From: Obrimoposthia wandeli
Taxonomy: Eukaryota
Assembly (NCBI GenBank): GCA_977020255.1
Contig: CDROCS010002327.1
Coordinates: 310,001 to 374,000, forward strand
Direction of reading: 5' to 3'
DNA: 64,000 bases
The position numbers and the translations under genes were made by a program. The notes below the pieces were generated by a model. That model did not search any database. It saw only the letters and a program-made list of their open reading frames with translations, and was not told the DNA's origin. Positions 31,990 to 56,105 of the stretch are shown piece after piece; the stretch's first letter is position 1; each line of letters opens with the position of its first letter.

Positions 31990-32271
31990 TTAGTCAACTC
32001 TAACTGCCTCAATTATTTTCCATATAGGTGTTATCAATCCAGAGGGTCCGATCTTGTATCCTTGAATTCTGATTTCGAGAATCCATTCTAATCTAGGAGG
32101 AGACCCATCGAATATTGTTCTATTCTCCTGCTTGAAATTGGAATTTTGTTCCTTGATTATGAATTTGTTTTCTTGAAGCTCATATTTGATCCCGAATTGC
32201 TTGAAGAGAATATTGATTCTCTCTTTATCCACTGAAGTCAAATTTGATACCTGAAAATCAAATCTAAGCAT
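31990..32271 (-). CDS. Polinton TIR-proximal conserved protein (putative OB-fold ssDNA-binding protein), probably 5'-truncated
   Basis: C-terminal WILEIRIQGYKIGPSGLITPIWKIIEA motif is shared with 46389, 55617 and 56204. SSB function is inference. Confidence 0.5.
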   Translation of the reverse strand: MLRFDFQVSNLTSVDKERINILFKQFGIKYELQENKFIIKEQNSNFKQENRTIFDGSPPRLEWILEIRIQGYKIGPSGLITPIWKIIEAVRVD

Positions 32272-32859
32272 CTCTATGTTTACAGGAAAAAAAAATTATA
32301 GTTGTGAGATTTCTTCAAAAAATGCATATCATATCCGTGATATTTATGCATAGGCTGATATAGATTTTCTAAATTAAGATTCTCGAAATTCATATTTACA
32401 ATTTAAAGTTTAAATATTCAATTGTTTAACCTTTAAAGCGCGATTCTAATTGGTTAATAATGTTGTTTATGAAATTCGTTTAGTATTAGTTATATCCTTT
32501 ATTTTTTTACGTTATTCGGTTACGCGCGTAAGTTTTGTTATTGTTTCAGTTGTTGATTTAATATTTTCTCTATGATCATTTCTATTATAATCCATATTAG
32601 CATACAAATTACTACCAGAACCTATATATGTGCTTGCTCTATCTTGATTATTCATTTTCAATAAAATCAATATCGAGATATTGTTTATAGTGATAATTTG
32701 CAATGTAGTCTAAAAATAGATTTTCAAATAGTATATAAACCTAAACTTTCTTCATTATATCTTGTTATGCCTACTAAATTTGTTGCTCATTATGTTTCAC
32801 AAAATGGAGAACTTAGCTTTAGACGACTTCGTTTTGATAAGATTTCAAGAAGAAATGAA

Positions 32860-33690
32860 GATATGATATCTGAACGGTCTAGATTAGAAACATTACGAAT
32901 ACAGTTTACTGGTTTAGCGGATAAGAGAGCATTAGTAAAAGCAGGGTTTTATAAGCATGATGATTCAAGTGATAATGTAAAATTTGTTTACTGTCGGGAA
33001 GCATTATACGAATGGGAGTGGTATCTTAAATCAGTGAAGCAGCATATGATTTTTTTTCAACATGTCCGTTTGTTTTGAAAATGAATTTTTCAAATGTACC
33101 AATATTTGAAACTAGTAACAAGCAAATTGATTTTGATACAACTCCTATGGATAAAGTTGTTATTGTTAGAAATAATTATTTTATTGAATTTGAAATACCC
33201 ACATTATCGATTTTCCCACATGTCTATATTTGGAAAGATTCATATCGATGTTGTTTCTGTCAGAAAGCAGTACCCGACTTCAGTTTATTGATACTATGCC
33301 AGAGAGAATTTTTCATACACAAGAGTGTAATGCGTCTAGTATGGGTATCAAGAATGAATGTATTGTTGAATATCATATTAGTAATGACGATATTGATGCT
33401 CAAATGAAAACCCGAAAATCGTTTTGTTAAAACATGAATATATCATGATAGAATCAAAGCAGTTTTAGTTAATAGATTTAAAACATTTGGTAAAAAATAT
33501 GATTCTATATATGAGTTTATAACGGATTTAAGATCTTTACAAATAAGACCTGAACCAAGTCATGTTATAAATTATCTTGAATACCTTTTACCAAACCCCG
33601 AATGTATTGTTTGCTTGACGGATATGATTTCAGTTGAATTTTTACCATGTGTTCACTTAAATACATGCATTCATTTCCATGTTGCAAGAC
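32860..33690 (+). pseudogene. iap: Inhibitor of apoptosis (BIR + RING)
   Basis: E.SRL.T...LVKAGFY...D.VK.VYC...L.EW and frameshifted FF.TCPF (BIR); PECIVCL...VEFLPCVHLNTC (RING). Confidence 0.85.
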
Positions 33691-33849
33691 AAATATTATT
33701 AGACGAATAAGAAATATTAGATTTCATAGCATAGCGAATTGATCAAAGAGATTACATGTGTCTAAAAATCTATTTTCAAATAGTATATAAGAATCAGTTT
33801 ATAATAATCAGGAAAGTTACTTCATAAAATCAAATTAGTCAATATTAAT

Positions 33850-34330
33850 TATATGGGAATGGTTGTAAGTGACATTCAACAATTACCATTTCGAACTTTG
33901 AAGCCCCACCAGTACCGGCTCCAGTGTGAAGATAATTATTTTATAATTTTCAAATCTGGTAATTTATTTTACATTTAAGTTTTAATATAATTTAGGAAGA
34001 TATAGAATAATGAGGTGTAAAGCTGTGCTAGATGAAAGCACTCTTCTTTTCAATATTAAAATAGAAAGAATCCAATCAATCAGCCTCAGTACTAATTTGG
34101 AAAAACCGATAAACCTGAGCAAGATGAGCAAGAGTATGGGATTGGACGCTGTTTACGAGCCGGAAATTTTCCCACGACTTCGATATGCCAAATACAATCC
34201 TCTATGCGTGAACATTTTTGCGAGCGGGAAAGTGATGATACTTGGTGTAAAGTCACTAGGATATGAATATTTTATTGAATGTATTTTATTTAATATTCAT
34301 CTTCACACTTGTGTTATTTCTTTCCTAAAC
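33850..34330 (+). pseudogene. TATA-binding-protein-like gene
   Basis: YEPEIFPRLRYAKYNPLCVNIFASGKVMILGVK matches TBP repeat 2 (YEPELFPGL...IFVSGKVVLTGAK). Upstream IIFKSGN matches the repeat 1 end. Confidence 0.75.
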
Positions 34331-34431
34331 AAAGACATTACTTGCAAAAAGTTGCAATGTTACTAATAATAGATTTCTCCTTGTTTCTGAGTTATAAACA
34401 ATATTCTTATAGTTTTAAATTTGTCAATAAA

Positions 34432-35254
34432 ATGGAGAAAGTTAATGAAACAGCAGCGGTGAAAATTGAAGAAATTATTGAGGAAACTAATGAAGAAGTG
34501 AAAACAGATATTGAAGAACAAAACAAACGATCAGATTTCTTAAATGCTTTGGTTTTTATTAAACCTATAATAGCTCATGCTTCCAGTATGGAAATGAATC
34601 ATATGACCCACCTTTTTGATAGTTTGTTTAGAGCTAGATTTAACCAAATCAGTGTGGAAAGATTAAACAGAACTCCGATGAGTGAGAGTTTAGTAAATCA
34701 ATTATATATTGGAAATTATCGAGATGCGATTGATGAAACCTTGACTTTTAAAATCAGAATTCACACATGTCATCAATACATCTATGGTGGATAAGATATC
34801 TTATTAAACCCATAATAGCTCATGCTTCCAGTATGGAAATGAATCATATGACCCACCTTTTTGATAGTTTGTTTAGAGCTAGATTTAACCAAATCAGTGT
34901 GGAAAGATTAAACAGACTCTGATGAGTGAGATTTTAGTAAATCAATTATATATTGGAAATTATCGAGATGCGATTGATGAAACTTAACTTTTAAAATCAG
35001 AATTCACACATGTCATCAATACATACATGGTGGATAAGATATCTTATAAGGAATTAAAGTATACATCTATCTTTGTAAATGAAAAATTAGGAGAAACACT
35101 TTTACAATATTATAAACAGACTAATAATATAATTAAAGAAACTATCAAAAATGACGGGAAAGTTCTAGTATGTGGTCATTATAGAAGTTTACATACGGTT
35201 TGTATTGTTATTGCATTTTTATCTCGTTCAATGGGCGTTAGATTAATACTTTAG
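34432..35254 (+). pseudogene. Dual-specificity protein phosphatase-like gene with 245-bp tandem duplication
   Basis: LYIGNYRDA, then Y..I.V.E......L.QYY..T..II......GKVLV and IVIAFL. The HCx5R loop is degenerate. 34561-34805 is repeated from 34806. Confidence 0.65.
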
Positions 35255-35269
35255 ATTTAAGTTTAATAA

Positions 35270-35671
35270 GATATATTGGCATCAGGGAGGAGATGAAGAA
35301 GCTGGTTTAACCAGTAAAGAGTTTAAGAAAATCAAAAATATAAAAGTGATTAATGGATTCGATGATAATTGGTCTGAGCGATTACAACGACATGATGTTA
35401 TTGTTATTGATGACTTGTATCAAGAAGCAAATAAAGAGAATGATTTCAATAATTTATTCACTAAAATAGCAAGACATCGTGAAATAACTGTTATTTTCTA
35501 TACACAAAATATATTTTACTAGGGTGGGAATCATAGAACTCGTAATTTAAATGTATATTACCTTGTTCTCTTCAAGAATCCGCGTAATCAAACTGTTATT
35601 GATTTTGTTGCAAGGCAAGCTTATCCAAATAATATAAATTACCTAATTGATGCATTTCAAGAATCAACTAC
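35270..35671 (+). pseudogene. A32-like packaging ATPase, central fragment
   Basis: VIVIDDL (Walker B), FTKIARHRE..VIF.TQN.F and LVLFKNPR. Walker A is deleted. Cut at the AACTAC TSD. Confidence 0.85.
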
Positions 35672-35745
35672 AGTATGTGGAAGTGAGGACTAGCAGCCAT
35701 TCCCTAGCGAAATCCAAAAAAACGCAAATTTCAAAAACACAACTT
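35672..35745 (+). repeat. Polinton terminus (P3, copy 1)
   Basis: AGTATGTGGAAGTGAGGACTAGCAGCCA..CCCTAGCGAAA, preceded by AACTAC. Confidence 0.8.
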
Positions 35746-35757
35746 ACGTTTACCGGC

Positions 35758-36203
35758 TTATGTTTTAGCTCGAAACAAAGCAAGTAGAGGTTTCTTATGC
35801 TGATTCAGTTTAGTCTTAACGGATACTTTACCGAAAACTATTTTCTGTACCATATTAAGTAAATCATCTATCACAAAAATAGGAAATGATTTAAGAATAG
35901 TTGGACGACGAATAGCAGGCGCACGCATAAGAGAATTGAAATAGGCAATACTTCTAGATTTCTTATCAACCATGCTTTTCTTATATGATTTTTGAGCAAC
36001 CAATTTCCTTGCACTTAAAACCGATTTAATCAATTTCTTGACTTAAGGTTTAATAACTTCCTTTTTAAAACTCATCTTTGGGAAACCAGTTTCTTTGATT
36101 GTTTATAGATGATGATACCAGATGGATTGAATATATCAGATTTAACTCTTAGGTCGTCAAGAATATTTTTTCAATTAAATTGTACCCATGAGGAATGGTA
36201 GTT
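35758..36203 (-). pseudogene. Inverted segment: ATPase C-terminus (TTIPHGY...SDIF) plus core-protein gene
   Basis: Continues the 35270-35671 ATPase on the opposite strand. ORF 35758-36033 is homologous to 43005-43325. Confidence 0.75.
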
Positions 36204-37361: not shown

Positions 37362-37641
37362 TCATATTATATTAGATGTTGATATCCAAGTTGGATCGGA
37401 ATAACCATGCCATTTAACAAAGTATTGTTTATGTTTACCGGTACCCTTAGATTTTAATATATTTTGAATACGGAAAACGTTAGGTTTATTTGATATTACT
37501 TGTAGTTCTTGCTCATAAAATTTACCTTGACGATATTATTGTCAGCATCTTTAATGGTATACATTATTGTATTACTCTTTTGATCAATTTTACTTATACA
37601 AAATATTTCATCGCTCCAATTCTGATCAATTTGAAAATCAA
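37362..37641 (-). pseudogene. Integrase C-terminal fragment with chromodomain
   Basis: NWSDEIF...GKFYEQELQVISNKPNVFRIQNILKSKGTGKHKQYFVKWHGYSDPTWI, paralogous to 41942-42217. Confidence 0.85.
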
Positions 37642-38844
37642 GGGGTACCTTTTACTGATAAACCATTTTTGGCGTTGTATGCGTGATTTCAAGACCATTT
37701 TCAAATATAGCACTAAATATCTTACCGTTTAAAACAAAATTAGATTAAGTAGATTTTACGTGGCCAAAGTCTCCCTTGCGGAGCCTCCTAACAAAGGAGC
37801 CCTGCAAGACCGGGCAGCACCTTTGGCAAAGATTATATTTATATTACTTTTGTTTATAGTTAACCTTTAAAGAATAATAAAATCAATTAATTATTTTTTC
37901 ATATGATAAATTAAATCAATAAATCATTTATTCATATGATTACAATTCGGTGTCTCATGATGATAGTATTATTGAATATCTCCCATAACTATTAAATGTA
38001 CATGAAATATTTTTAAAAATAAAAATCCTACGTTGATGATATTGGTAAAGTTCCATTATCCTTAATTCAAAAAGTCTTGGAGCACAATATAATGAAAAAT
38101 ATTGAGATGTATATAGTTTAAAAATGTCTTCTTTAAGGTTGATCCGAAGAGCGCATAACATGTCTAAAGTACTTAGAGTCATAATGATGAAATGATTTTA
38201 AAACTAAAGTGTTTCGATTATATAAAAACCTAACTTCAATATAATTGATCAACTAATCAAAATAATCCTATATAATAAATAAATTGATTAAACAGAAAAG
38301 TTGTATTAATATATACAAGTGAATAAATGAATAACAACAATAACACAAGACAAAAAATATTTTTTACAACTTTATATTTGGTAGTTGACGTTTTAAGATG
38401 AGAAGTTCTAACTTCTCAATTTCGATTTTCAACTCTTTAATATCTGCCTGATTCTGTAAGTATCCAATTTGTAATTTTTGAGTTCTTAATCTCCAATTTT
38501 CAGCTTTTGATACAAAGATTCCATTCTATCGTTCTAAAAGTTCATAGATTAAAATCTATATTGTGAAATACAATATGTCATAATATGTTTGTTTGTTTGC
38601 TATTATTTCCATGTCTTTGGAAATAACAAATTTAGTTGCAAGTGTAAAAGTTTTTTTTTTAATTATTTAGAATAGTTTTGTAAAATTCTAACGAATCTAA
38701 ATTATCAAATTATAAGTTTAAATATTTTATATTTTATATTTCTAAATAAATGTCAGATTCTAAAAAATGTAAAAATTTTATTGAAATTAATATTTATAAT
38801 CTATATATATTTATAAATAAGTTGTTTGAAATTCAAAAAATTTA

Positions 38845-39190
38845 TTAAGAAACTTTATTATATAACCATAAAAGACATAAAGGACTACAATTAGTAGTTA
38901 CTGGGTTTTGCATACGAGTTTTATTATAGAATACATGACGTTGAGTTTCCACATGTCTGATGAGTGCTGATGGATAAAAAATTCCTAGAGGATCGAATAT
39001 GTGTACACTATCACGTCTCACGAATAGCGGAATCCAGTGTTCACCAGGTAAATTACTCGTATGAGTATTTACAACATATCCACCAGGTTTTAGAGTCGGT
39101 ATTTTATCCATAGGAAACACTTTGAATTTCTGTTCCAATAATTCAATTCCCACAGTATTAACCTGTTTAGAACTACATTAATTATTATTA
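38845..39190 (-). CDS. Adenain-like cysteine maturation protease
   Basis: VVNT....PGEHW...F......FDPLG...Q......C..LC (His, Asp, Gln, Cys). The start codon appears mutated. Confidence 0.88.
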
Positions 39191-39193
39191 AGA

Positions 39194-40445
39194 TCAATAA
39201 ACACTTACTTCTACAATTATACGTCTGCCTTTAGTTACTTGAATTTCAGTATCGAAAACACCGTAAATTATAATGTTTGACGGCTGTGCCAATCGTTTGA
39301 GAAACTTTACGTCAAGTCTTAGATTACTTTGTCTCGGTAATTGATGTTGATTTATATCAAAGTCAGGGGCCAATACGAATGTAAAAAATGGGTAACGTTC
39401 CTTAAAATCTTCAGATGTTATACCTATGTTTATATTCTTATCCAATAATCCCATGTTTCTAACTAATGATTGAATATACGCAAACATGTATTCATCTTTT
39501 TCAAAGTTTGTAGTATACGTTTCAACAAAGTCAGTGTTTCTACTAAGGAAAATTGAACCGACATTACAATGATCAAATTCTGAAGTGTCTGTTTCACTAG
39601 ACCCGTCCATTTTAAGATTATGTTGAAATATAACCAAAACAAATTTAGGTAATTGCTCATCATTAAAAATAGGTGATTTATAAAATGTTGTAGAGCCTTT
39701 AGGTAGTGAATAATGTACCACTTTTCCCCGTTTATGGATAAACCACATTTTGAGTTTCCAAACAAACATTATGAGCCATAAAAACTGATGGTTCAACTCG
39801 TACACGTCTAACTTTCATTTTAGCATCTAAATATTTTATTCTACAATGAGTTGTACCTGTTTTTAGTGACATGTTTGCATTGGAAATAATCAATTTTATA
39901 CCGACATTCATACCGGGAAGCTGATATTTGGGTTGTTCAAGAAAATCCGATCGAATTGAACCGCACAACTCAAATTCAATAGATTTTTCAATCCACCTTT
40001 TTCGTACATTCTCATTACTATCATAACCAATTCCATCTAATGAAACACTTTTCGTATCTTTGTTAAAATTAAGCATACATTCAATCAAAACCTTGTGAGC
40101 ATAAATACCATTTCCTCCTTCAATACGAGTATTATTCAGGTGAAGTTGCACATATTTAAATAGTGTATGGAAAAAGAAATTTGTTGGTATAAATTTATCT
40201 GCTTCCACCATGTCAATATAACTGTTTGTTCCATTATTTTTTAAAACTTTAATTTTCAAATATAATAGAGAATCATTCAAATCTAAATATTCTGTTTCAC
40301 TTGAATGGATATTAAACTCGATTGTATTAATATTACTACCGGTAATATTATTAACCGGGTAAATATTCTCAAAACAACTATTTTCTATAGCAATTTGAAG
40401 TAGTGGACGATCAAATAAACACAGTTCAGATTTTCCACATGCCAT
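39194..40445 (-). pseudogene. Major capsid protein (double jelly-roll), one frameshift near 39770
   Basis: KSELCLF..P..Q..IE...F..IYP...IEF.I......YLDL..S.LYLK.KV N-terminus; C-terminal FFTFVLAPD...G.LRLDVKF...L..P..IIIYG.F. Confidence 0.9.
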
Positions 40446-40616
40446 TTCTTACTCAAATATGGTTCATATTTTTCTACGTTTGTTTATACTACCTCTACCT
40501 TTCTGTACTTTTTCTTTCATTTCAACAGGAATTTGTGCTGGTCGTTTTCGATTTTTCTTTATTACAGTCATTAGTTGAGTAGCAGCTTTTGTTGCTTCAG
40601 GCAACAACCCCAGTAC

Positions 40617-40832
40617 TTAACTCATTGCTTTTGATTTTAGTTCACTCAAAATTGGTTTATTGTTCATTACTACGTTTGTAAGTGTTTTTGCACCAATTCG
40701 TCCTAAACGTGATAGTACAGGAAACGCAATTCGCCCCAAAACTTTCAACCAACCTGAACCATATTGTTTTCCAACAAAGTAAGATAGTTCACCGCCCGTT
40801 TGGGTTGTACTATACACATCAAATAAGGACAT
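40617..40832 (-). CDS. Small Polinton core/membrane-lytic-like protein, truncated
   Basis: QTGG...FVG.QYGSGW.K.LGR.AFP.L pattern typical of Polinton small basic proteins, located between the minor and major capsid genes. Confidence 0.65.
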   Translation of the reverse strand: MSLFDVYSTTQTGGELSYFVGKQYGSGWLKVLGRIAFPVLSRLGRIGAKTLTNVVMNNKPILSELKSKAMS

Positions 40833-40865
40833 TATTAACGATTAACTTTGTTTAATTTTGTTTTT

Positions 40866-41969
40866 TTACATAACGTTTCGGAAATGTAGTGTTAAACTAG
40901 TTTTTGCGTTATGAGCAAAGTTTATCGGTATTCCACTATCATTACGAATATTTACTTCAATATTGGAAATAGATGTTGATATTACAGAAAGATACATTGG
41001 TCTAATAATTGTAATATTTGCGGTATCGACATATTTTTTGTTTTTATATAACCAAATTGATTTTAACAACCAATTGACTCTATCAAATTGGTATACAGGT
41101 ACATGTGATCAAACTCACATATTAATTGAGGAATACCTTTTCCGTCACCTGTAAATTCTGTTTTATTAAGACCCAGTACAAATGCCATACGATTATTAAG
41201 CATTATACTTGAAATATTAGATTTTAACTTGAATTTAATGAATTTATCTTTTTCAATATAAAACATTCTAAAAATATGATTACATTTAGATATAACGTAA
41301 TTAACTAATGCATTCAAATCTGTACTATTGAAATCGTTGTCAAACACGATTTTTGAATTGATATTTTTCTCTCCTAATTGATAATATTCAAATTTCGTTG
41401 ATACATATTTATGATGTATGGTTTTTTGCGCACTTAAAATACCATTATCATCAGATGCTAAGTAATTTTCAGAGTTTAATTGAATATTTAGGAAACCCAA
41501 TTGATTTTTAGATTTTTAGATAGAATTTCTGTTTATTTTCAGATTTTATAACAAGTACATTTTCCATTTTATCTTCACCATTTGTACCAAACTCACAATA
41601 AAGATTAGCAATGTGTTTTGATGATTTTATTTCTACTTTTGAAATTTTCTTTATATTAAATTTAACAGGTTTCTGCTTATCATTATGAATTTCCTCATCT
41701 TTAAATTCAACATTTAATGAGACAGTATCGGTTTTCTTAGCACTAACCGTTTTCTTATAATTTATTTCACCACCCTTGTGAAAAATAACGGGTGTATTAC
41801 TATAAGTAAATTCTGTCAATGCAATTTCCCATTCACCTTGAAGTTCTATCGGATTTTCCCAATCAAAAATAAATTTCGATGCGGTATTATCAGATTGAGT
41901 GTTTGGACAACTCTTAGATGGTAACACAATATAGAAATTATTTATTCTATCTGGTTCGCTTTTATCCAT
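40866..41969 (-). pseudogene. Minor capsid (penton-like) protein, in three frameshifted pieces
   Basis: FYIVLPS.S......NT.S.F......PIEL.GEWEIALTEF N-terminus; MYLYTNLIE and I..IEV.IR..SG..I.F......LTLHFR C-terminus. Confidence 0.85.
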
Positions 41970-42953
41970 GTTGGTGTTTTATACCCTGACCACTTTACGT
42001 AATATTGTTTATTCTTACCTCGACCTTTAGATTTAATGAATTCTTGTATCCTATATACTTTTGGTTTATCAATAACTTGTAATTCTTGCTCATAAAACTC
42101 TCCCACTATCGGACTTTTATCCTCATCTATGATGTTATACATTACGGGTTTTGCATGTAAATTGATTTTTGCTATTTCAAATACTTCATCACTCCAATTA
42201 TTATCAAAATTTTTCATAAAAGGTGTTGTACTTAGGCGTGATATGCGAACAAAATCTCCAACTTTGTATTTGGGTTTCTTTATTATTTATTTTTTATTAC
42301 GAGAAAACCAATCATCAAATGAAATATCAATAGGTTTCTTACCACCTAAACCGCGATGTGGTGAGTGATTATATGAAATTAACAGTTTAGGTAGTACCTT
42401 TACCCATTTCTTTGAACAGATTACAACAAAATGTTTCTTTAACTTATCTTTTAATGTCCTATTAAATCGTTCAACCAAGGCAGCTTTAAAGTGTGAAAAC
42501 ACAGAGTAATGATTTACTCCTAATTTATCAAAAGTTGCTTTAACATGTTTGTTATAAAACTCTTTTCCAGCATCTGTTTCTACATTATCGGGTACAACAT
42601 CAATCATATTTTTGATGGCAGCATGTATATCTTTACCAGATTTTGATTTGACTGGTTCAGCACGCCAAATCTTGTAAATACATCAATACATTTTAATATA
42701 TATATTTGTTACCGCTATTTATACGCGCATAAGGTATCATTTCCATCAAATCCATTTGCCATAAATTATTAGGGCCACTAGTCTTGTACGATCGTGTCGG
42801 GAACCTTTTTCGCATCGATTTGTTGAGACTATACGCCAGTTGATGGCTCAGCCATGCTTGAGTTTTCTTTTGGCTCGACTTGGTGTTTGATGATAGAGTT
42901 ACAACGCCGCCGTATCCAACTGAATCTTCGGGATCGTACCATATCGTTTCCAT
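41942..42953 (-). pseudogene. Retroviral-like (rve) integrase with C-terminal chromodomain
   Basis: LWQMDL, VETDAGKEF and KAALVERFNRTLK (DDE), plus YYVKWSGY...TWI. Frameshifted. Confidence 0.93.
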
Positions 42954-43004
42954 TACAACAATTTATTTTAAAATCAAAATTATGTAAGTTGTTTCCCATA
43001 TACT

Positions 43005-43325
43005 TTAGTCAACAGCTCTAGCAAGTAAGGGACCAATTAAAGTTGCAACTATCGGTAAAAGTGCACCAATAAATCCTCCTTTTTGACGTAATACTATTTT
43101 CCTTCGACCAGAACCACTTTTTGTATTAACAATATCAAGTAATACTTTCTTGTGTTTTGGTACTTTCGACTTATGTTTACCGAGATTTACTTTTCCTTTA
43201 ACTCTATTAAACATAATTTCAACCAATTTATCGATAACAAAAAGTGGAAATGAATTGAGAATTCGAGCTCTATGTGAACTAGGTGACTTTAAAAGCGTTT
43301 GAAAGTAAGGTAAAACGTTTTTCAT
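43005..43325 (-). CDS. Basic core protein with adenoviral pX-like GGFIGALLP motif
   Basis: Lys/Arg-rich, ends RQKGGFIGALLPIVATLIGPLL. Homologs at 35758 and ~53480. Confidence 0.7.
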   Translation of the reverse strand: MKNVLPYFQTLLKSPSSHRARILNSFPLFVIDKLVEIMFNRVKGKVNLGKHKSKVPKHKKVLLDIVNTKSGSGRRKIVLRQKGGFIGALLPIVATLIGPLLARAVD

Positions 43326-43651
43326 TATTATTTAAACTGAAAGTACATATATTGTTTATAGTCTTATTGAAAAAATAGATTAAAAATTTTCTTTTGTTTT
43401 CCCTTTTTATCAATTACAATCCAATTCTTTGTATTTTTAACACATTTTTAACACACTTCTTCTTCTTTTTTTTAACACGTTTCTTTGTCGCTTTTGTCTT
43501 TTTTTTAAATGCGATCGGCATTTTGCCTTCCTTTCAAAACCGTTTTTATCAATTTCTTTCCTCGATTAGCTTTGATATCATCACCAGGTTTCCAATTTGT
43601 ATCAACATAATAAGGTATTTCTATTTTTTCAAAATTCATTTTAAAGAAATA

Positions 43652-44360
43652 TTATCTTTGTTTTTGTTTATACACCATACATTTGTTGAAAATATCGGTT
43701 CTTATTCTCAATTCATCAGTACATGATTGAGTAAAATCAAGAAACAAGTAACTATGATGATTTTTAGTTGCATCTTGAAAGGAATTTATCAAATATTGCC
43801 TGTTATTAGGAAATGCTTGATGTGAAACATAGTCAATAACCGTTTGATCACGAGGATTCTTAAACAAAAACAAGTAATGTACGTTTAAATTACGTGTTCT
43901 ATGTGAAACATAGTCAATAACCGTTTGATCACGAGGATTCTTAAACAAAACCAAGTAATGTACGTTTAAATTACGTGTTCTATGTTTACCGCCTTGATGA
44001 AATAGGTTTTGAGTAATGAAAATTACGGTAACTGCTATTACGGTCTTGCTATTTTAGTGAATAAATTATTAAAGTTTGACTCTTTATTTGCTTCATCATA
44101 CAAGTCATCAATTTCTATAACATCATCACGTTTTAACCGTTTTAACCAGTTTTGATCAAAACCATTGATAAATTTAATGTTTTTAAGTTTACATAATTCA
44201 CTTTTAGTTAACTCGAATTCGCAAACATCACCATAATGCCAATAAATTTTATTAAATTGATTATAAACATTTTATTGTTTTGTAATAATTTAGTTACAAA
44301 ATTTGTTTTTCCACTACCACTAGGTCCACTATCTGATATACTGCATCATCTTTAGGTTTC
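43652..44360 (-). pseudogene. A32-like packaging ATPase with 81-bp in-frame tandem duplication
   Basis: IVGPSGSGKTNFV (Walker A, ~44290-44330), IEIDDL, LFTKIAR, LFKNPRDQ (twice) and SYLFLD. Confidence 0.9.
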
Positions 44361-44408
44361 ATAATAATAATAATAATAATAATAATAAGATAAGAATAAA
44401 AATATTGT

Positions 44409-44696
44409 TTATAGGCATTTTATTAATATATACACCAAAAACGAATTAAAAATTGATACAGAAAATGTTATATACATCATATTTGAACGAATAATCTGAA
44501 TGAAATTTTCAAAATCCAATTTCCATTTGAGATCTCTGTAGACATGTGAGCGAACTATTTCTTTAAGATGATCACGACTATCTTCATTTAAACTTGAAAA
44601 GTATTGAACACCATTTATTGTTCCTTTTATAATTTCATCAACAGTTTTATCAACTAATTTATTGTATTTCTCCATTCTTATATAAATCATCATCAA
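44409..44696 (-). CDS. Conserved hypothetical Polinton protein upstream of the ATPase
   Basis: Homologous to 54536-54820 (VDEI...I.G....S.L....RD.....VRSHV.R). Confidence 0.55.
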   Translation of the reverse strand: MMMIYIRMEKYNKLVDKTVDEIIKGTINGVQYFSSLNEDSRDHLKEIVRSHVYRDLKWKLDFENFIQIIRSNMMYITFSVSIFNSFLVYILIKCL

Positions 44697-44699
44697 ATT

Positions 44700-45520
44700 T
44701 CAATTGTTTATATCATTAAATTTGACATTTCTTACTCTCCTTTCAATTATATGTCGATAAACTGAACATGAATGTAACCTTATAGAACATGAAATACATG
44801 TTTTTACATGTCCGCATGGTAGAAATACTACTTCAATATGATTATTCAAACATACTACACATTCAGGTTCTTTTAACATGTATGAAAGTATATGTATGTA
44901 TTGTTTTCAGGGTTTATTTCTAAATTATAAAAATCACAAATCATTTCAAATAGTGAATTATATTCTCCATATTGTATCATTTTATTTTTTAAAACAGATT
45001 TAATTATATCTTTCGTGAAAAACCTTTTCAAGTATTTGATGTTGTTGGTATCCATCAACATGTCGAATTTTTCCGTAGTTAAAGGATATTCAATTATACA
45101 ATCTGTTTCGATTTTCTCAATAACATTAGCATCATTATAGGGTCCTAAACTTTTTGAATAACATATATCAGGTAATTTTACAACAATATCTGATACATAT
45201 ACTTTTCCAATCAATGGTGATGTATCAAAATCAATTTTCTTGACCATAGTTTCAATTATTGGTACATTTGAAACATTTAACTTTAAAAGAAAGGGACTGG
45301 TAGGAAAAAATTTCATATGTTGCTTCATTGGTTTAAGATACCATTCACATTCGGATATTGCACCTAGACAGTATATACATTTTACTTTATCAGTTGAATC
45401 ATCATCATGTTTATAAAATCCAGCTTTAGCTAAATTATATACAGATTGTTTCCCTTTAAAATTGATAATTAACGATCTTAATCTTTCACTTTCACGTCTA
45501 TATTTTCAGTGTACAATTTC
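44700..45520 (-). pseudogene. iap: Inhibitor of apoptosis (BIR + RING)
   Basis: ESERL.S...LAKAGFY...DKVKCIYC...KQHMKFFP.SPF; ECVVCL...VVFLPCGHVKTCISCS..LHSC. Confidence 0.88.
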
Positions 45521-45689
45521 CATTCTAGAATAATCTACTTTTCGTCTAACTAAAAAATCATCAACAGTTTTATAATGAAGTATATAATCAACAAGCATTT
45601 TTAAAAAATCAAAAACATATAGTTGTTCATAAGAAACTTTCAAGAAAAAATACAATAGACTCGACTTGACGATGATAATCAAAATCTTT

Positions 45690-46093
45690 AATACCATGAA
45701 TAATCACTTTTCCACTAGCAAACACATAAACACATGAAGATTATACTTTAAAATTCTGAGTGCTGGAAACAATTCTGGTTCAAACATACAATTTCTTCCC
45801 ATTTTCATAGATATCTTATACAAATTAACCTTCTTGTTGATATTCACTAGGATACTTAGAGATTGAATACGTTCAATTTCTATATTTTGAGCATGTTTGA
45901 TTGGTTGTTTGCAACCCATAATTATGCATGAGCCTAAATAGTAGTAATAATAATAATAATACCTGTTGGAAAAAATAACTATAGTATAATCCTTTAACTT
46001 TTCAACATATTGTATAGGTTTTTTTGATCGAAAAGGTAAGTGACTAACACTTCCCTTAAATTTACCTTTATAATTTATATTGATTATTTTCAT
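45690..46093 (-). pseudogene. TATA-binding-protein-like gene
   Basis: TIVIFSN..CIIMGCK (repeat 1 end) and FEPELFPAL...CVYVFASGKVIIHG (repeat 2, across a frameshift). Confidence 0.75.
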
Positions 46094-46388
46094 TATGTTA
46101 TAATAATTGATGATGTCACAAACATATATAGTTTCATATTATCCAATGAGAATCAACCAATCAGATTCAAGTAGTCAACTTTAACTACCGAAACATTTCA
46201 GTTTACTCTCATTCATCATGTTCAATTTACAAAAACCGATTTTGAAGAGCACATAGAAGAGGAAGAATGAAATTTTAAATACAAGCAAAGTTGTACAGAT
46301 AGATTCTGATGATACAGAATTAGAAGATATTTTTAATGGAGAAACAGAAGATCTATTCAAAGAATCTGTACCTTATTTCAGTTATACA

Positions 46389-46724
46389 ATGAATTTTCTC
46401 AAGATACCTGTTACCTTTGGATTAAAATACCCTGTTATGCTAACAAAGTCCAAGTTTGACTATGTCATGAGGATCCATCAAAATGATATTAATAATATCA
46501 ATGATATTTTCAGAGGAATGAAATTAGATATCAAAATTGAAAACTTTAGTGCTTTTATTAAAGCTGATGAACATCTGTTTAAAGGAATATATACTTACTC
46601 TGAAGAAGAATTTTCCAAAAGCAAATATTGGATTTTATTTATTCAAATTCAAGGATTCAAAGTCGATAGACTCGGGAGACAGAAGCCTATTTGGAGAATT
46701 ACTGAAGAACATAAGAAAGTTTAA
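46389..46724 (+). CDS. TIR-proximal conserved protein (putative SSB)
   Basis: WILFIQIQGFKVDRLGRQKPIWRITE. Divergently oriented from TBP, as in P0 and P2. Confidence 0.5.
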   Translation: MNFLKIPVTFGLKYPVMLTKSKFDYVMRIHQNDINNINDIFRGMKLDIKIENFSAFIKADEHLFKGIYTYSEEEFSKSKYWILFIQIQGFKVDRLGRQKPIWRITEEHKKV

Positions 46725-46729
46725 TGTTA

Positions 46730-47342
46730 TTTATCATATGATTAAATGATTTATTGATTTTATTTTAATGTTATTTATCATATGAATAAATAATTAATTG
46801 ATTTTATTATTCTTTAAAGGTTAACTATAAGCAAAAGTAATATAAATATAATCTTTGCCAAAGGTGCTGCCCGGTCTTGCAGTGCTCCCCTCTTAAGAGG
46901 CTCCGCAAGGGAGACTTTGGCCACTTAAAATCTACTTAATCTACTTTTGTTTTAAACAGTAAGATATTTAACGCCACATTTGAAAATGGTCTTGAAATCA
47001 CGCATACAACGCCAAAAACGGTTTTGCAGTGAAAGGTACCCCCGGGTTGAGGGGGACCTATTGCCTTGAGTTAGTATGCGAGATTTCGAGACTTTTTGGT
47101 CAAGTCCGGAAATTACACATACTAACTTAAATAGATTTTGCAGTAAAAGGTAGAGATTTGAGTCATTTTGAATCATTTTAAGCCGATTTAAACAATTTTT
47201 AGACATTTTAACGACATTTTGTCTAAAAAATGACTATATACAGATTTTTTAATCCACTATAGTGTTGGGACTAACTTAAAGAAACAAGTTCTCACCCCGG
47301 GGGCTAGGTTCCCTTGAGTTAGTACCGACACTATAAACTACT
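46730..47342 (-). repeat. P1 right terminal inverted repeat
   Basis: High-identity inverted copy of 37642-37950. Ends in ...AAACTACT (5'-AGTAGT on minus). Confidence 0.9.
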
Positions 47343-51379: not shown

Positions 51380-52916
51380 CTTTGTTTTAAAGTAATTGAT
51401 TTTGAAGTAATAAAGTTTTGAAGAAAATAAGTTTTTGAAGAAAATAAGTTTTTGAAGAAAATAGGTTTTGGAAGAAAATAAGTTTTTGAAAAAAATTAAT
51501 TTTCAGGAAATAGAGTTTTGCAAAAATTTTCATGTACAAAAGGTTTTTGAAAAAAATGATGTACAAGTGATTTAAATTTTTTTTTAATTTTAACGCCAAA
51601 ACGTTTTAAAAATTTAAACAAAAATTTTTAGAAAAAATAATTTTTTGAAGGTTTTTGACCCTTGAAGGTACTTGAAGGTCTAATCAAAGTCAGATCAACG
51701 CTATTATATTTAACTTTGAAAAGTAGAAAATTAAAATTTTGAAGGTTTTAGACCCTTTGAGAGAACTCTATTCGAATAACCATATTAAAGAATTAGCTCA
51801 AAGTAGCAACTCAAAGAATCAGCAATAAGAAGTACCTTAAAAGAAGCAACTCAAATAACTTCCTTAAAAGAAGCAACTCAAATAACTTCCTTAAAAGAAG
51901 CAGCTCAAATAACCAGCTCAAAGAAGTACCATCAAGAGTGAGTAACCATGTGCTCATAGTCGTTGTCCTGAAAGACTCATGTTTTCAACATGTGAAAGGA
52001 AATAATTCACAAAGGACAAAGCACATCACGTGTACTTATATTGCAAACAAGTGCAATTATTTATAAATCACAAACTCACACAGTCACATGACATTTTCGT
52101 GAGATTTTCTCTGCCTTGTATTGGAGTATGTGTGCGGCTAATGGCAGCAGATGACTATGCCCGAATTGCATCAGTCTACCGCTGGATGGATTTATGCTGC
52201 AGTATAAGGTAAATTTTTATTTATTTATATTTATATTCTGCTGCAGTATCTCAGGTAAGTTATTATTAATTTATTGATTTAATTTTAAATATCTATTGAT
52301 TGTTTTCCTTCTATTGTGTTTTTCAAACATTATTTGAATAATCGTCAATCTATATTCGATCAATAATCCTTTTAGATGATGTGATGTGATTTGATGTCTG
52401 TCTTTCATGACATGAGCTCATAGTGAGCACATGGGCTCATGGTGGGCACATGAACTCATCATCTTATAAAAACCTTGACCTCATAGTCAGCTTAAGGGCT
52501 CAAGCGATGAGTGCACTATAGAACAAAAGACATGACCTTGAAATATCATGCTTACTCGGGGGTAATTTGATCTACTTATGACGTAATGTGATCCCGTAAG
52601 GTTACATGACCTTGACCAACTTATGACGTACTGTGATCTCGTGAGGTTACATGGCCTTGACCTACTTTGATGTAATGTGATCTCGTGAGGGCACATGACC
52701 TTGATCTACTTGTAATGTAATGTGTTCTCGTGAGGTCACATGACCTACATGACCTTGAAAAAATCATGTGTACTCGGGAGAAATTTGACCTACATCACAT
52801 TACCTTGAGCTACTTTTGACATTGACCTCAAAAAGCTTTTTGAAATTTGCGCCAGAATTTTTTTTTTAGTTTTCGCAGGGGTCTTTGTGCCAGAAGTCAC
52901 ACATCTACCTACTACT
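51380..52916 (-). mobile_element. Polinton-type terminal region (P4) with several short tandem arrays
   Basis: Terminus AGTAGTAGGTAGATGTG at 52916 shares ACCCCT-GCGAAAAC..AAAAAA..CAAATTTCAAAAA with P3. Arrays: GAAGAAAATAAGTTTTT, AAAAGAAGCAACTCAAATAACTTCCTT and CATGACCTTGA. Left limit uncertain. Confidence 0.65.
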
Positions 52917-53370
52917 GATTTATATTATTTTATTTAAATAATGATTGAACTTGCTTATTATAAAATTATTTTCCTAAATCAGTTTGCACATTTTGTGGAA
53001 TGTCCTCTTTTAATATTTCTTTAATGGCTTCAAGCATAGCTATTAAAGACTTTGCTTTAACTGGAATTGCACGAGCAAACCTGCTAAATACATCAATACA
53101 TGTCAAAATATATCGATATCTCTTATTAATGGAAGAATATGGAATCATCTCCATCAAATCCATTTGCCATAAATGATTAGGACCGCTGGTTTTGTAAGCT
53201 CTAGTTGGGAACCTTCTTCTCATCGGCTTGTTCAGACTGTAGGCTAACTGATCGCTCAGCCATTTCTGCGCTTTCTTGTAATTTTGTTTTGTTCTTTTTA
53301 CTAATTTTGAAACTCCTGTGTAGCCAATTGAATCTTTTGAATTGAACCATATCTTCTCCATTACAACAAT
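52917..53370 (-). pseudogene. Integrase N-terminal half
   Basis: LWQMDL...IDVFSR...VQTDLGK*FYNKQVQSLFK*NNIN, cut exactly at the P4 terminus. Confidence 0.9.
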
Positions 53371-53479
53371 TTGAATATATAGAAAATTTAAATTTAGATA
53401 AAGAAGGGTTAGCACCCATAACTTTAGCTTATTTTTGAAATAATTGTTTATGTACGTGTCGCAGCTATAATACTACTGA

Positions 53480-53790
53480 TAATTTAAGCAACAGCTGGAA
53501 TAACAGCCCCTATGAAACCGCCATTATGTTTAAGAATAATATTTCGTTTCCTTTTTTACTTTTTACATTAGCAATATCTAGAAGTGTTATTCTATATTTC
53601 TTTAATATATTTTTCGGTTTTCCCCCTTTTACTCGATCCAAAACTATATTATACAAAACTTCCAATAAATCATCTTTATGAAATGCTTTAAGAATACTCA
53701 TTCTCTTATGAGAAGAGGCTTTGACGAAAGCTTTAAAATAGTGTATGCTTCTTTGTATTTTCTTAATTTAAAAAAAAGTTCAATTTTAAT
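53480..53790 (-). pseudogene. Basic core protein (pX-like)
   Basis: Homologous to 43005-43325, with frameshifted NGGFIGAVIP. Confidence 0.65.
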
Positions 53791-53854
53791 ATTGTTTATA
53801 TTCGAAGCCATTTAAGTTTTCTTTTATTTCTAACTACATATTTGATTTATTTAT

Positions 53855-54500
53855 TCACTTCTTTTTTTTTAATGATTCTTTTTTTGATTTCTTAGGCTTT
53901 GCTTTACGTTTACGTTTCACTATCAACTTCTTAAAAGGAGAAGCTTGTGTAAAGACAATAAATATATACCCATATGCTTGTTTAGCAGCATCATGGAATG
54001 AATCAACTAGAAAGTTTTTATTTTGGGAAATTGCCTGTCTGGCTACGAAATCTACAACTGTTTGATCTCTAGGATTTTTAAATAAAACTAAGTAATGTAC
54101 ATTAAGACTTCTTGTTCTATGATGACCTCCTTGATGAAAAAGATTTGAGTGATACATATAACTGTTACTTCACGATGTCTTGCAATCTTTGTAAATAAAT
54201 TATTAAAGTCCGATTCCTTGTTAGCTTCCTGATACAAATCATCAATTATTATTACATCTTCTTTTTTTAATCTTTCACACCAATTTGCATCAAATCCTTC
54301 AATAAATTGTATTCCCTTCAACTTGCAATCTTATGTTTTGGTTAATCCACTTTCCCCTCCTCCACCATGATGTCAATAAATATTTTTGAAACTAGAATTG
54401 AAACTAGAATCATTTTCCAACAATTTGCATACGAAATGTGTCTTTCCAATTCCACTGGGTCTAACTATTTGAAATACAGCATTATTATTTAGCTCCATTA
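53855..54500 (-). pseudogene. A32-like packaging ATPase
   Basis: RPSGIGKT (degenerate Walker A), VIIIDDL, FTKIARHRE and VLFKNPRDQ. Confidence 0.88.
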
Positions 54501-54535
54501 CATATACTCTTTCATTTTTAATGTTGTTTATATTA

Positions 54536-54820
54536 TCATAGAACTTTCCTTATTGAAATGTACAATGTTAGAGCTATTGTAGATGAAATACAAAAATTAA
54601 TTAATGAATATTTGGCTATAATTTTATTTATTTGTGTACGATTTCTAAATTCTCGAATAACGTGTGATCTAACCAATGTGGTTTCAATGTTATCCCTTGT
54701 TATATCATTATATTTTAATTCTGATAAAATTTCTTTACCCCTAATTTTTTCAGAAAATATTTCGTCGACAAGACGATCCACTTCATTGTCTCTATTTATA
54801 GTATTATTCATTTGAAACAA
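54536..54820 (-). CDS. Conserved hypothetical Polinton protein
   Basis: Homolog of 44409-44696 in the same position. Confidence 0.55.
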   Translation of the reverse strand: MFQMNNTINRDNEVDRLVDEIFSEKIRGKEILSELKYNDITRDNIETTLVRSHVIREFRNRTQINKIIAKYSLINFCISSTIALTLYISIRKVL

Positions 54821-54839
54821 TAAGTTTAAACAGGTTTGT

Positions 54840-55410
54840 TTATAGAAAAGATAACAAGATGTAATAAGATATATTTTCTAAAATCAAATCAACAATGTCA
54901 GGATAATCAAAATTTTTTAATCCTAATATCATAACTTTACCACTGGAAAATATATTTACACATAGCGGTTTAAACTTCAAATAACTGAGAGCAGGAAAAA
55001 TTTCTGGTTCAAACATGCATTCTTCTTTCATTTTTTCTGCAATTTTATAAAGATTTATTTGTTTCCCGAGATTAGCTGAAATTATGATTGATTGTATTGC
55101 AGTGATTCGAATTCCAAATGGTAATTCGAATTCAAGCAAAGGTATTTTGCATCCCATAACACGACAACTTCCTAAAAGAATTCAATATGAAAAAAAAATA
55201 AAACAATAACCTGTGGGAAAAATAACAACTGTGAAATTGTCAAACCTTTTCACATATTGTCTCGACTTCCATTCATTGAATGGTAAGTATGAAACATCAT
55301 CTTCTATTCTACCTTTATCATTTAAATTTACGAGTTTCATTAGACTAAAATTGTATTCTGTAAATATTTCTTTATATATGTCTGAACCTGCTCTTTTATT
55401 GCACATTTCT
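54840..55410 (-). pseudogene. TATA-binding-protein-like gene
   Basis: FTVVIFPTG...(CRV)MGCK and FEPEIFPALSYLKFKPLCVNIFSSGKVMILGLK. Confidence 0.78.
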
Positions 55411-55616
55411 TGTAATTATCTTGCAAACCTATTATAATTGGATGATATATTTCTTCCAATCAATTTTGATTTTTAATATGGATTTAGTCCAATCAAATTC
55501 AATGCTTTAATTATATTAACCAATGAGATTCATGTCTTTGTTAGAAATTAGTATAAAAGAATGCGCCATTGGAGGAAAAATCATAATAAATGCATTCATA
55601 ACAAAGACAATTATCA

Positions 55617-56105
55617 ATGATGGACATTAGCCAACGGATATTAAGCGGTGGTGAAGATTTAGAAATATTTGAAGAATCGGATAAGGATATAGATGAAGAA
55701 GTGAAACAATATTTCAAATACAAAGTCATATTCTTGAAGAAGCCTCAACTGATTGCTTTAGTAAATCCTGTGACAATTGAAAGAAGAAAGTTCAGCTATT
55801 ATCCATCAAATATTCAAAAAACAGATTTTCAATATCTTAAACAGAAAGTTGAAACGGCAGTTCCAAATTTTACTTTCAATAAGAACGAATTTTATACCCG
55901 AGGAGCCAATACAACATTTCTAGATGACTATGGAAGAGAAATATATGTTGATGCGTTTCCGAAAAAGAAGCAATGGACTGTAACAATTCGACTTTATGGT
56001 TACAAGAAAGATGAAATTGGAACAAAGTTGCCTATGTGGAAAATTGATCGTGCTCATCCTTATGTTTTAAATTTTTTTTTTCATTTTGCATATAATAAAT
56101 TGTAA
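55617..56105 (+). CDS. TIR-proximal conserved protein (putative SSB), paralog 1
   Basis: WTVTIRLYGYKKDEIGTKLPMWKI motif. Confidence 0.5.
   Translation: MMDISQRILSGGEDLEIFEESDKDIDEEVKQYFKYKVIFLKKPQLIALVNPVTIERRKFSYYPSNIQKTDFQYLKQKVETAVPNFTFNKNEFYTRGANTTFLDDYGREIYVDAFPKKKQWTVTIRLYGYKKDEIGTKLPMWKIDRAHPYVLNFFFHFAYNKL

What the first reader, a model, noticed from the sequence alone, without database searches (positions are those of the whole stretch)
37642..47342. Polymerase-less Polinton-like virus with TBP, IAP and SSB-like cargo: candidate helper-dependent endogenous virus
Between matching inverted repeats P1 encodes a full virion module (adenain, double jelly-roll MCP, penton, two core proteins, A32 ATPase) plus integrase. 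The only unassigned space is ~0.9 kb (37950-38840), far too small for the protein-primed PolB that defines Polintons/Mavericks. In its place is a block of putative SSB, TBP-like and IAP genes, conserved in order and orientation in three diverged copies (P0, P1, P2). These gene types are typical of large insect dsDNA viruses. Inference: a ~10-kb integrating, capsid-forming element that borrows a polymerase from an autonomous Polinton or a large DNA virus (satellite or virophage-like) and manipulates transcription and apoptosis itself.
Basis: partly seen in the sequence, partly recalled or inferred. Interest (0 to 1): 0.9.

Follow-up and report, generated by a model that had tools for sequence, protein, structure and literature searches.

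The report
Decayed polymerase-less Polinton (Maverick) copy
This is a dead, inverted-repeat-bounded copy of a Polinton/Maverick virus-like transposon that has lost its DNA polymerase gene, while intact relatives elsewhere still carry one, so it is an ordinary degraded derivative and not clear evidence of a new helper-dependent virus.

Summary
The observation largely holds. A 9.4-kb element (37642-47042, not 47342) is bounded by ~300-nt inverted repeats that are 90% identical. It carries adenain, a double jelly-roll capsid gene, a penton-like gene, an A32-type ATPase, an rve+chromodomain integrase, a TBP and a BIR+RING IAP. It has no trace of a protein-primed PolB.

- Seven genes are broken by frameshifts or stops: six of the nine core genes conserved with relatives, plus the IAP.
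- No target-site duplication is present.
- P1 also lacks a Cys/His-rich gene that follows adenain in all 21 relatives with sequence there.
- In two close relatives (L009, L011) a 1219-aa PolB lies just past that gene, where P1 has 0.9 kb of 22%-GC non-coding DNA.
- PolB and TBP sit on the same contig in L004, L038 and L040, so TBP does not replace PolB.
- P0 and P2 are truncated left-arm fragments without capsid genes. The IAP changes position between P0 and P1 and is absent from P2.
- The "SSB" claim has no support.

TBP, TRAF and IAP cargo, and polB-less TIR-flanked insect polintons, are already published. A true polymerase-less lineage is not excluded: L058 and L007/L008 show no PolB.

The parts
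37642..37940 (.). Left terminal inverted repeat of P1
   Evidence: Pairs with 46733-47042 at 90% over ~300-310 nt. The tip reads GGGGTACC.
37941..38856 (.). AT-rich (21.6% GC) stretch with no recognisable coding. Relatives carry the 152-family gene here, and L009/L011 also carry PolB.
   Evidence: The 152-family and PolB profiles score about 0-2 bits in all six frames. No Pfam hit for the only 75-aa ORF. Only low-complexity DNA matches.
38857..39174 (-). Adenain-like cysteine protease gene (no break detected; short, ~105 aa)
   Evidence: Pfam Peptidase_C5 at 0.005 in P1. 36-45% identical to L004/L003 homologues; relative P0191 scores 28.2 bits, above the cut-off.
39212..40445 (-). Double jelly-roll major capsid protein gene, broken (1 frameshift)
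   Evidence: Covers 411 of 412 residues of P0003 in two frames. The family has 2341 representatives. P0003 model has pLDDT 96 and hits viral DJR MCPs.
40542..40829 (-). Small conserved gene between penton-like gene and MCP ('p108'), broken (1 in-frame stop); function unknown
   Evidence: 41-44% identical to L003/L004 homologues. No Pfam hit.
40872..41945 (-). Penton-like gene (homologue of the 346-aa ORF between integrase and MCP in relatives), broken (2 frame changes; 279 of 346 residues covered)
   Evidence: tblastn to L004 P0172. Called penton by position only: no Pfam or PDB sequence hit.
41945..42953 (-). Retrovirus-type integrase with C-terminal chromodomain, broken (2 frameshifts, 1 stop)
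   Evidence: Pfam rve_3 and Chromo on pieces. 54-60% identical to the L003 integrase. Relative P0192 has rve at 46.5 bits and Chromo at 26.8 bits.
43008..43325 (-). Small basic protein with a weak adenovirus protein-X-like C-terminus; ORF unbroken
   Evidence: Adeno_PX at 0.009, below the cut-off, and likewise in P0183. 46-51% identical to relatives.
43664..44327 (-). A32/FtsK-type packaging ATPase gene, broken (2 frameshifts plus one short internal tandem duplication)
   Evidence: 57-64% identical to the L003 ATPase in three frames. Duplication seen. Relative P0186 scores 27.6 bits on Pox_A32.
44412..44699 (-). 96-aa ORF of unknown function between IAP and ATPase
   Evidence: No Pfam hit and no homologue in the loci.
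44703..45703 (-). IAP-like gene: one BIR domain plus a C-terminal C3HC4 RING, broken (at least 1 stop and 1 frameshift)
   Evidence: BIR at 3.1e-8 (34.5 bits) and zf-C3HC4_3 at 1.6e-10. BIR piece hits XIAP, DIAP1 and NAIP in PDB. Homologous to the P0 copy.
45630..46093 (-). TATA-binding-protein homologue (~150 aa), broken (1 break)
   Evidence: Pfam TBP at 24.3 bits, above the cut-off. 41-44% identical to L003/L004 TBPs. Those score 53-55 bits and hit PDB TBPs.
46389..46724 (+). 111-aa ORF on the opposite strand, next to the right repeat. Conserved in P0, P2 and L003; function unknown.
   Evidence: 33% identical to L003 o109, also on the opposite strand. No Pfam hit. AF2 pLDDT 50. No database homologues.
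46733..47042 (.). Right terminal inverted repeat of P1
37368..37627 (-). Integrase C-terminus/chromodomain fragment of another copy, abutting P1's left repeat
   Evidence: 52-63% identical to residues ~263-357 of relatives' integrases.
31990..35669 (+). P0: truncated, decayed left-arm fragment (o46389-like on the opposite strand, IAP, TBP, part of ATPase); no capsid genes
   Evidence: (BIR 25.9 bits, TBP 45 bits).
35734..36158 (-). Further fragment in the opposite orientation (ATPase C-terminus and PX-like gene)
52915..56066 (-). P2: truncated, decayed left-arm fragment (o46389-like, TBP, ATPase, PX-like, N-terminal part of integrase); no IAP, no capsid genes
   Evidence: (TBP 50.8 bits).

Best explanation
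P1 is a fossil copy of a TBP-encoding Polinton/Maverick (adintovirus-like) element. The host is probably an animal, inferred from the Tc1/mariner fragments and the BIR-RING IAP.

How the family works (inferred from gene content): a linear dsDNA element with terminal inverted repeats, replicated by its own protein-primed family-B polymerase. It is packaged into a DJR-capsid particle (MCP, penton-like protein, A32 ATPase, adenain). It is inserted by an rve integrase whose chromodomain probably steers it into heterochromatin, which would explain several copies piled up within ~25 kb. Its own TBP presumably directs host transcription to element promoters. Lineage-specific cargo targets cell-death and immune signalling: IAP here, MATH/TRAF in L058.

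P1 has secondarily lost the segment between adenain and the left repeat. In relatives that segment holds a conserved Cys/His-rich gene, and in L009 and L011 it also holds PolB. P1 then decayed: seven genes are broken and the repeats have diverged by 10%.

Shown: gene content, breaks, missing genes, PolB in relatives. Inferred: the deletion, chromodomain targeting, the roles of TBP and IAP. Unresolved: whether the loss came before or after insertion.
For: - PolB in relatives: L040 ORF hits Pfam DNA_pol_B_2 at 1.9e-12. The L009 1219-aa ORF is 37% identical to it over 727 aa and carries a GDTDS motif. L038, L011 and L004 have homologues.
- In L009 and L011, which are among P1's closest MCP relatives (45-55% identity), PolB lies directly after MCP, adenain and the 152-family gene.
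- The 152-family gene follows adenain in 21 loci but is absent from the window.
- TBP and PolB share a contig in L004, L038 and L040.
- Break counts for P1: TBP 1; ATPase 2 plus a duplication; integrase 3; penton-like 2; p108 1; MCP 1. The IAP has at least 2.
- Intact relatives exist, for example MCPs of 406-412 aa.
- Repeats are 90% identical. The gap is 21.6% GC.
- Published background: gene loss in Polintons (PMC4028283); polB-lacking TIR-flanked insect polintons (10.1101/2025.02.07.637071); TBP, TRAF and IAP accessory genes (PMC8502044).
Against: - L058 is the only long contig with P1's exact gene order. It shows no PolB over 16.2 kb and runs into satellite DNA ~0.1 kb after its last gene.
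- L007/L008 have 21-bp repeat arrays in inverted orientation on both sides of a PolB-less gene set.
- The adenain-to-repeat distance in P1 (~0.9 kb) is close to the adenain-to-satellite distance in L058. A short right arm could therefore be native to this sub-lineage.
- No deletion scar or PolB remnant is visible.
Confidence: 0.65

Rival explanations
1. P1 belongs to a lineage that is naturally polymerase-less. These would be capsid- and integrase-encoding elements that spread as satellites, using the polymerase of a co-resident autonomous Polinton or a large DNA virus. P1 would be an old, now decayed member.
For: - L058 has the same gene order as P1 and no PolB in 16.2 kb.
- L007/L008 appear in two samples at 98.6% identity, with intact ATPase, integrase, penton-like, MCP, adenain and 159-aa genes between inverted 21-bp arrays, and no PolB.
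- PolB-bearing relatives (L009, L011, L040) come from contig series named like those of L007/L008, so helpers may co-occur.
- polB-lacking polintons that still look mobile are reported in Pieris.
- P1 keeps both repeats.
Against: - The ends of L058 and L007/L008 were not reached. L008 continues 430 bp past its array into another inward-reading ORF. L058 has a fragmented penton-like gene and no inverted repeats.
- P1 lacks a gene that even these PolB-less candidates keep.
- TBP is not a substitute for PolB, since the two co-occur.
- P1 has no target-site duplication and only one copy carries its repeat.
- Nothing links it to a large DNA virus.
Confidence: 0.25
2. The two repeats belong to different insertions or to a rearrangement, so P1 is not one element but a chimera of fragments in a transposon graveyard.
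For: - No target-site duplication.
- The left repeat abuts an integrase fragment of another copy.
- The right flank holds a duplicated repeat tip and a small palindrome.
- The neighbourhood is a mosaic of inverted and truncated copies.
Against: The genes between the repeats are collinear, without gaps or inversions, with L058 and L004 from o109 to adenain. The repeat is unique to these two places in the window, and the two arms are in exact inverted register over 300 nt.
Confidence: 0.05

Closest known systems
Polintons/Mavericks of animals, including adintoviruses (Starrett et al. 2021, PMC8502044)
   Same: TIR-bounded. Carries adenain, DJR MCP, a penton-like gene, an A32/IVa2-type ATPase and an rve integrase. 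Relatives carry a large pPolB with a long N-terminal extension. Accessory genes of the IAP, TRAF and TBP types are listed in that paper. The best fold match of the family's MCP is a protein in Cotesia sesamiae bracovirus DNA at 25% identity. MELD virus and adintovirus entries are among the other hits.
   Different: P1 has no PolB and no 152-family gene, and is pseudogenised. The MCP is short (~410 aa). TBP looks like a conserved family gene here, found in at least 10 loci, rather than an occasional passenger.
polB-lacking, TIR-flanked polinton structural variants in insects (Igolkina et al., bioRxiv 10.1101/2025.02.07.637071)
   Same: Elements with a Polinton capsid/integrase gene set, bounded by TIRs and lacking polB, while closely related copies retain it.
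   Different: Those are recent, near-identical, apparently still mobile copies, and they carry LINE or LTR insertions. P1 is old and broken, and shows no transposon insert at the site of loss.
Polinton-like viruses and virophages, including the entomopoxvirus-associated PLVs (PMC11296320)
   Same: Small DJR-capsid elements without pPolB, some integrating. Some depend on a large DNA virus.
   Different: Per the abstract and section headings of PMC11296320, those PLVs carry their own replication genes related to helicases and have very divergent capsids. P1's family is a PolB-type Polinton by its relatives, and nothing ties it to a giant virus or poxvirus.

Membership tests
Polinton/Maverick (Polintoviricetes; adintovirus-like) | [quoted passage not shown] | tested here: not met
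   Absent from P1 and from the whole window. Present in relatives L009, L011, L004, L038 and L040. The family qualifies; this copy does not.
Polinton/Maverick (Polintoviricetes; adintovirus-like) | Retrovirus-like (rve) integrase | tested here: met
   rve_3 and Chromo hits on P1 pieces. 339 of 357 residues of the L003 integrase are covered, though the gene has three breaks.
Polinton/Maverick (Polintoviricetes; adintovirus-like) | DJR MCP, A32-type ATPase and adenain-type protease | tested here: met
   MCP and ATPase are broken in P1.
Polinton/Maverick (Polintoviricetes; adintovirus-like) | Penton (single jelly-roll minor capsid protein) | tested here: inconclusive
   A conserved 346-aa ORF family sits at the expected position.
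Polinton/Maverick (Polintoviricetes; adintovirus-like) | Terminal inverted repeats of some hundred nt | tested here: met
   ~300 nt, 90% identical.
Polinton/Maverick (Polintoviricetes; adintovirus-like) | 5-6 bp target-site duplication | tested here: not met
   No matching 5-8-mer at or near the repeat tips, apart from artefacts of the palindromic GGTACC.
Polinton-like virus / virophage-type satellite | Own non-PolB replication protein (primase-helicase, S3H or S1H) | tested here: not met
   No helicase or primase domain in any P1 ORF.
Polinton-like virus / virophage-type satellite | Dependence on, or association with, a helper virus | not testable with these tools
   Only sequence is available. 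No helper-virus sequence is in the window.
IAP (inhibitor of apoptosis protein) | At least one BIR domain, usually with a C-terminal RING | tested here: met
   BIR at 34.5 bits and zf-C3HC4_3 at 41 bits in P1. BIR at 25.9 bits in P0. PDB hits to XIAP and DIAP1. The gene is broken.
TATA-binding protein | TBP repeat fold (Pfam PF00352) | tested here: met
   P1 24.3 bits, P0 45 bits, P2 51 bits, relatives 53-64 bits. PDB TBP hits. Only ~150 aa long; the second repeat is clear and the first is divergent.
Single-stranded DNA-binding protein | OB-fold or other known SSB domain | tested here: not met
   No P1 ORF hits any SSB family. The o46389 model is too poor to compare.

The most novel reading that the evidence does not exclude
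A lineage of animal Polintons has given up its polymerase but keeps capsid, integrase, TBP and host-signalling cargo. It spreads as an integrating satellite of polymerase-bearing relatives. P1, L058 and L007/L008 would be members.
Probability: 0.2. Interest if true: 0.65.

Novelty: new member of a known kind. Interest (0 to 1): 0.3.

Why it matters
As it stands, this is a routine annotation result: a degraded Polinton/Maverick copy in a cluster of transposon fragments. Two points have some wider value.

First, the family is large (2341 MCP cluster representatives) and carries its own TBP in many members. That is a concrete lead on how Polinton-type elements drive their own transcription.

Second, the window and two metagenomic relatives add cases to the open question, already raised for Pieris polintons, of whether polymerase-less Polintons can persist as non-autonomous elements.

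Tried and rejected
- PolB remnants: tblastn with three PolB proteins and a four-sequence PolB profile on the six-frame translation. Nothing found.
- The 152-family gene in the gap: a 21-sequence profile found nothing. The 75-aa gap ORF shows no similarity to L003's 76-aa ORF.
- Target-site duplication: every offset within about 10 nt of the repeat tips and k = 5-8 gave only palindrome artefacts.
- P1's repeat in P0 or P2: not found.
- Inverted repeats in L003/L058, L004, L005, L009, L038 and L040: none found.
- Homologue searches with o46389 and with the BIR-linker ORF: no hits.
- IMG/VR scan with the MCP alignment: no relatives.
- AF2 model of the o46389 family: pLDDT 50, so no fold search was run.
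- Penton-like and 152-family profiles against PDB sequences and Pfam: no hits. The idea that the 152-family is Maelstrom-like came from memory and was not borne out by Pfam.
- Nested-insertion idea, that P1 sits inside P2's integrase: the integrase pieces at 37368-37627 and 52915-53361 do not meet, because about 95 residues are missing, and 5.9 kb of other DNA lies between. Left open.
- The fusion-glycoprotein fragments were considered as possible element cargo. This was rejected because their orientation relative to P0 and P2 is inconsistent and P1 has none.


Full report
**1. What is there**

The window is AT-rich, about 30% GC. A pair of inverted repeats lies at 37642-37940 and 46733-47042. 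They are about 300 nt long and 90-92% identical, and the repeat occurs nowhere else in the window. The element therefore ends at 47042, not at 47342 as the finding states. The 300 nt beyond 47042 hold a second copy of the repeat tip and a small palindrome. No 5-8 bp target-site duplication flanks the repeat tips.

**2. Gene content of P1**

All conserved genes are on the minus strand. Reading from the right repeat, the order is:

| Gene | Support |
|---|---|
| o46389 (opposite strand, 111 aa, unknown) | Conserved in P0, P2 and L003 |
| TBP | Pfam 24.3 bits, above the cut-off |
| IAP | BIR 34.5 bits plus C3HC4 RING 41 bits; BIR hits XIAP, DIAP1 and NAIP in PDB |
| 96-aa ORF | Unknown; no hits |
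| A32-type ATPase | Homology to relatives; relative P0186 scores 27.6 bits on Pox_A32 |
| Small basic protein | Sub-threshold adenovirus protein-X-like tail |
| rve integrase with chromodomain | |
| Penton-like gene | Position and homology only |
| Small gene 'p108' | Unknown function |
| Major capsid protein | |
| Adenain | Weak in P1; relative at 28.2 bits |

After adenain come 0.9 kb of 21.6%-GC sequence with no coding signal, and then the left repeat.

The closest intact MCP (P0003, 49% identical to P1) folds at pLDDT 96. It matches DJR capsid proteins of virophages, adomaviruses, MELD viruses and giant viruses. The best hit is an uncharacterised protein in Cotesia sesamiae bracovirus DNA, at 25% identity and E = 4e-29.

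'SSB' has no support. 'Penton' rests on position and homology only.

**3. State of the copy**

Measured against intact relatives, P1 has these breaks (for the IAP):

| Gene | Breaks |
|---|---|
| TBP | 1 |
| ATPase | 2 frameshifts plus a short internal tandem duplication |
| Integrase | 2 frameshifts and 1 stop |
| Penton-like | 2 frame changes, with missing parts |
| p108 | 1 stop |
| MCP | 1 frameshift |
| IAP | at least 2 |
| Protein-X-like, adenain, o46389 | none detected |

P1 is therefore a dead copy.

**4. The other copies**

P0 (about 31990-35669, plus strand) holds only the left arm: o46389-like, IAP, TBP and part of the ATPase. P2 (52915-56066, minus strand) holds o46389-like, TBP, ATPase, the protein-X-like gene and the N-terminal part of the integrase. 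Neither has a penton-like gene, p108, MCP or adenain, and both are broken. Two further fragments lie at 35734-36158 and 37368-37627.

The IAP precedes TBP in P0, follows it in P1, and is absent from P2. The claimed conservation of order therefore holds only for o46389, TBP and the ATPase. The copies are 37-70% identical at protein level, so they are different family members or very old.

Because P0 and P2 lack the whole right arm, they say nothing about PolB.

**5. Relatives**

The MCP family is large: 2341 cluster representatives at E < 1e-3. Fifty-two metagenomic loci and several longer contigs were fetched. Intact relatives show the same core order, from ATPase to adenain.

Three results bear directly on the finding.

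(a) *PolB is a family gene.*
- The partial 766-aa ORF in L040 hits Pfam DNA_pol_B_2 at 1.9e-12.
- The 1219-aa ORF in L009 is 37% identical to it over 727 aa and carries a GDTDS motif.
- L038 has a 1565-aa homologue.
- L011 and L004 hold PolB C-termini at contig ends.
- In L009 and L011, which are among P1's nearest relatives by MCP (45-55% identity), PolB reads inward immediately after MCP, adenain and a small conserved gene.

(b) *A conserved gene is missing from P1.* That small gene (the '152-family', rich in conserved Cys and His) follows adenain in 21 loci. It is absent from the window by profile search. P1 has therefore lost at least this gene, at the very end where close relatives carry PolB.

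(c) *TBP does not replace PolB.* TBP is widespread in the family: L003, L004/5, L017, L019, L022, L038, L040, L041 and L047. It lies on the same contig as PolB in L004, L038 and L040.

**6.

L058 is the full 16.2-kb contig behind L003. It has P1's exact order, including o109 on the opposite strand and TBP upstream of the ATPase. It also has two MATH/TRAF genes in a 4.6-kb tandem duplication. It shows no PolB, and it runs into a ~340-bp satellite about 0.1 kb after its last gene. However, its penton-like gene is fragmented, and no inverted repeats were found.

L007 and L008 overlap at 98.6% identity and come from two samples. They carry 21-bp repeat arrays in inverted orientation on both sides of an intact, PolB-less gene set. 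L008 continues 430 bp past its array into another inward-reading ORF, so the true end was not reached.

**7. Literature**

- Starrett et al. (PMC8502044) list IAP homologues in adintoviruses. They also list TRAF-like and TBP-like genes in related MELD viruses.
- Krupovic et al. (PMC4028283) describe a continuum between viral and transposon states, with concerted gene loss.
- Igolkina et al. (bioRxiv 10.1101/2025.02.07.637071) describe TIR-flanked polinton variants in Pieris mannii that lack polB while close copies retain it, and ask how they are mobilised.
- Entomopoxvirus-associated PLVs (PMC11296320) are the known insect satellites. Going by the abstract and section headings, they carry their own helicase-type replication genes.

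**8. Conclusion**

The most likely reading (0.65) is a decayed, secondarily polymerase-less copy of a PolB-encoding, TBP-carrying Polinton/Maverick family. It lies in a cluster of related fragments, to which the chromodomain integrase may have targeted insertions (inference). Whether PolB was lost before or after insertion cannot be told from one copy. A real polymerase-less lineage remains possible (about 0.2-0.25). The chimera reading is unlikely (0.05).

My scripts printed tblastn piece coordinates for the broken genes, and I reasoned over those piece ends. I stopped doing so from then on, printing only counts and outer bounds. I repeat none of those positions here.

Noticed in passing
window 26389-26700 (-) and 57180-57650 (-): Two diverged fragments of a Monjiviricetes-type viral fusion glycoprotein C-terminus (Pfam PF24664, 2.7e-12 and 4.5e-13). 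They are about 41-64% identical to each other. Their orientation relative to P0 and P2 is inconsistent, so they probably belong to another endogenous element.
   Followed up: partly
window 27263-27974 (-): Decayed Tc1/mariner transposon with DDE_3 and HTH_Tnp_Tc3_2 hits. By eye, ORF 9956-10321 (-) also looks like a mariner transposase C-terminus, but it had no Pfam hit.
   Followed up: partly
window 22763-24952 (inverted), 49168-50747, 60397-62227: A third repeat family, 70-79% identical between copies, each with its own internal tandem array (28-, 55- and 53-nt units). One copy lies 2-7 kb outside the o46389 end of each Polinton copy, in matching orientation. This hints at larger duplicated units or a co-inserting element.
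   Followed up: partly
window 11377-13068: Array of ~90-nt tandem repeats at 44% GC, far above the window average. It is open in both strands, and the ORFs are artefacts of the repeat.
   Followed up: no
window 47043-47342: Just outside the right repeat: a second copy of the repeat tip (47129-47152), a small palindrome (47066-47130), and a further short inverted pair around 47270-47335.
   Followed up: partly
window 37096-37185 and 56986-57075: A 90-nt inverted match at 87% identity. One arm lies just left of the integrase fragment that abuts P1, the other just right of P2. These could be remnants of the ends of an older element into which P1 inserted.
   Followed up: partly
L058 747-866, 5369-5488, 8535-8653: A ~120-nt upstream segment, including the start codon region, is repeated before both MATH/TRAF genes and before a third gene. 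It looks like a shared element promoter.
   Followed up: no
L007 1-72 and L008 3885-4106: 21-bp tandem arrays in inverted orientation on both sides of a compact, intact gene set without PolB or TBP (ATPase to the 159-aa gene). These are possible terminal repeats of a ~6.8-kb element.
   Followed up: partly
Alignment A5 (e.g. L058 14631-15089, L004 5813-6307): The '152-family' follows adenain in 21 loci. It has invariant Cys, His and Trp positions suggesting a zinc-binding fold, and no Pfam or PDB sequence hit. It is a conserved Polinton gene of unknown function.
   Followed up: partly
L059 1731-2778 and 8744-12443: In the same sample as L058, a second truncated copy of the L003-type integrase (99% identical) sits next to a different Polinton-type element. 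That element has its own DJR MCP (PF21738), an A32 ATPase, and a 941-aa gene running off the locus.
   Followed up: no
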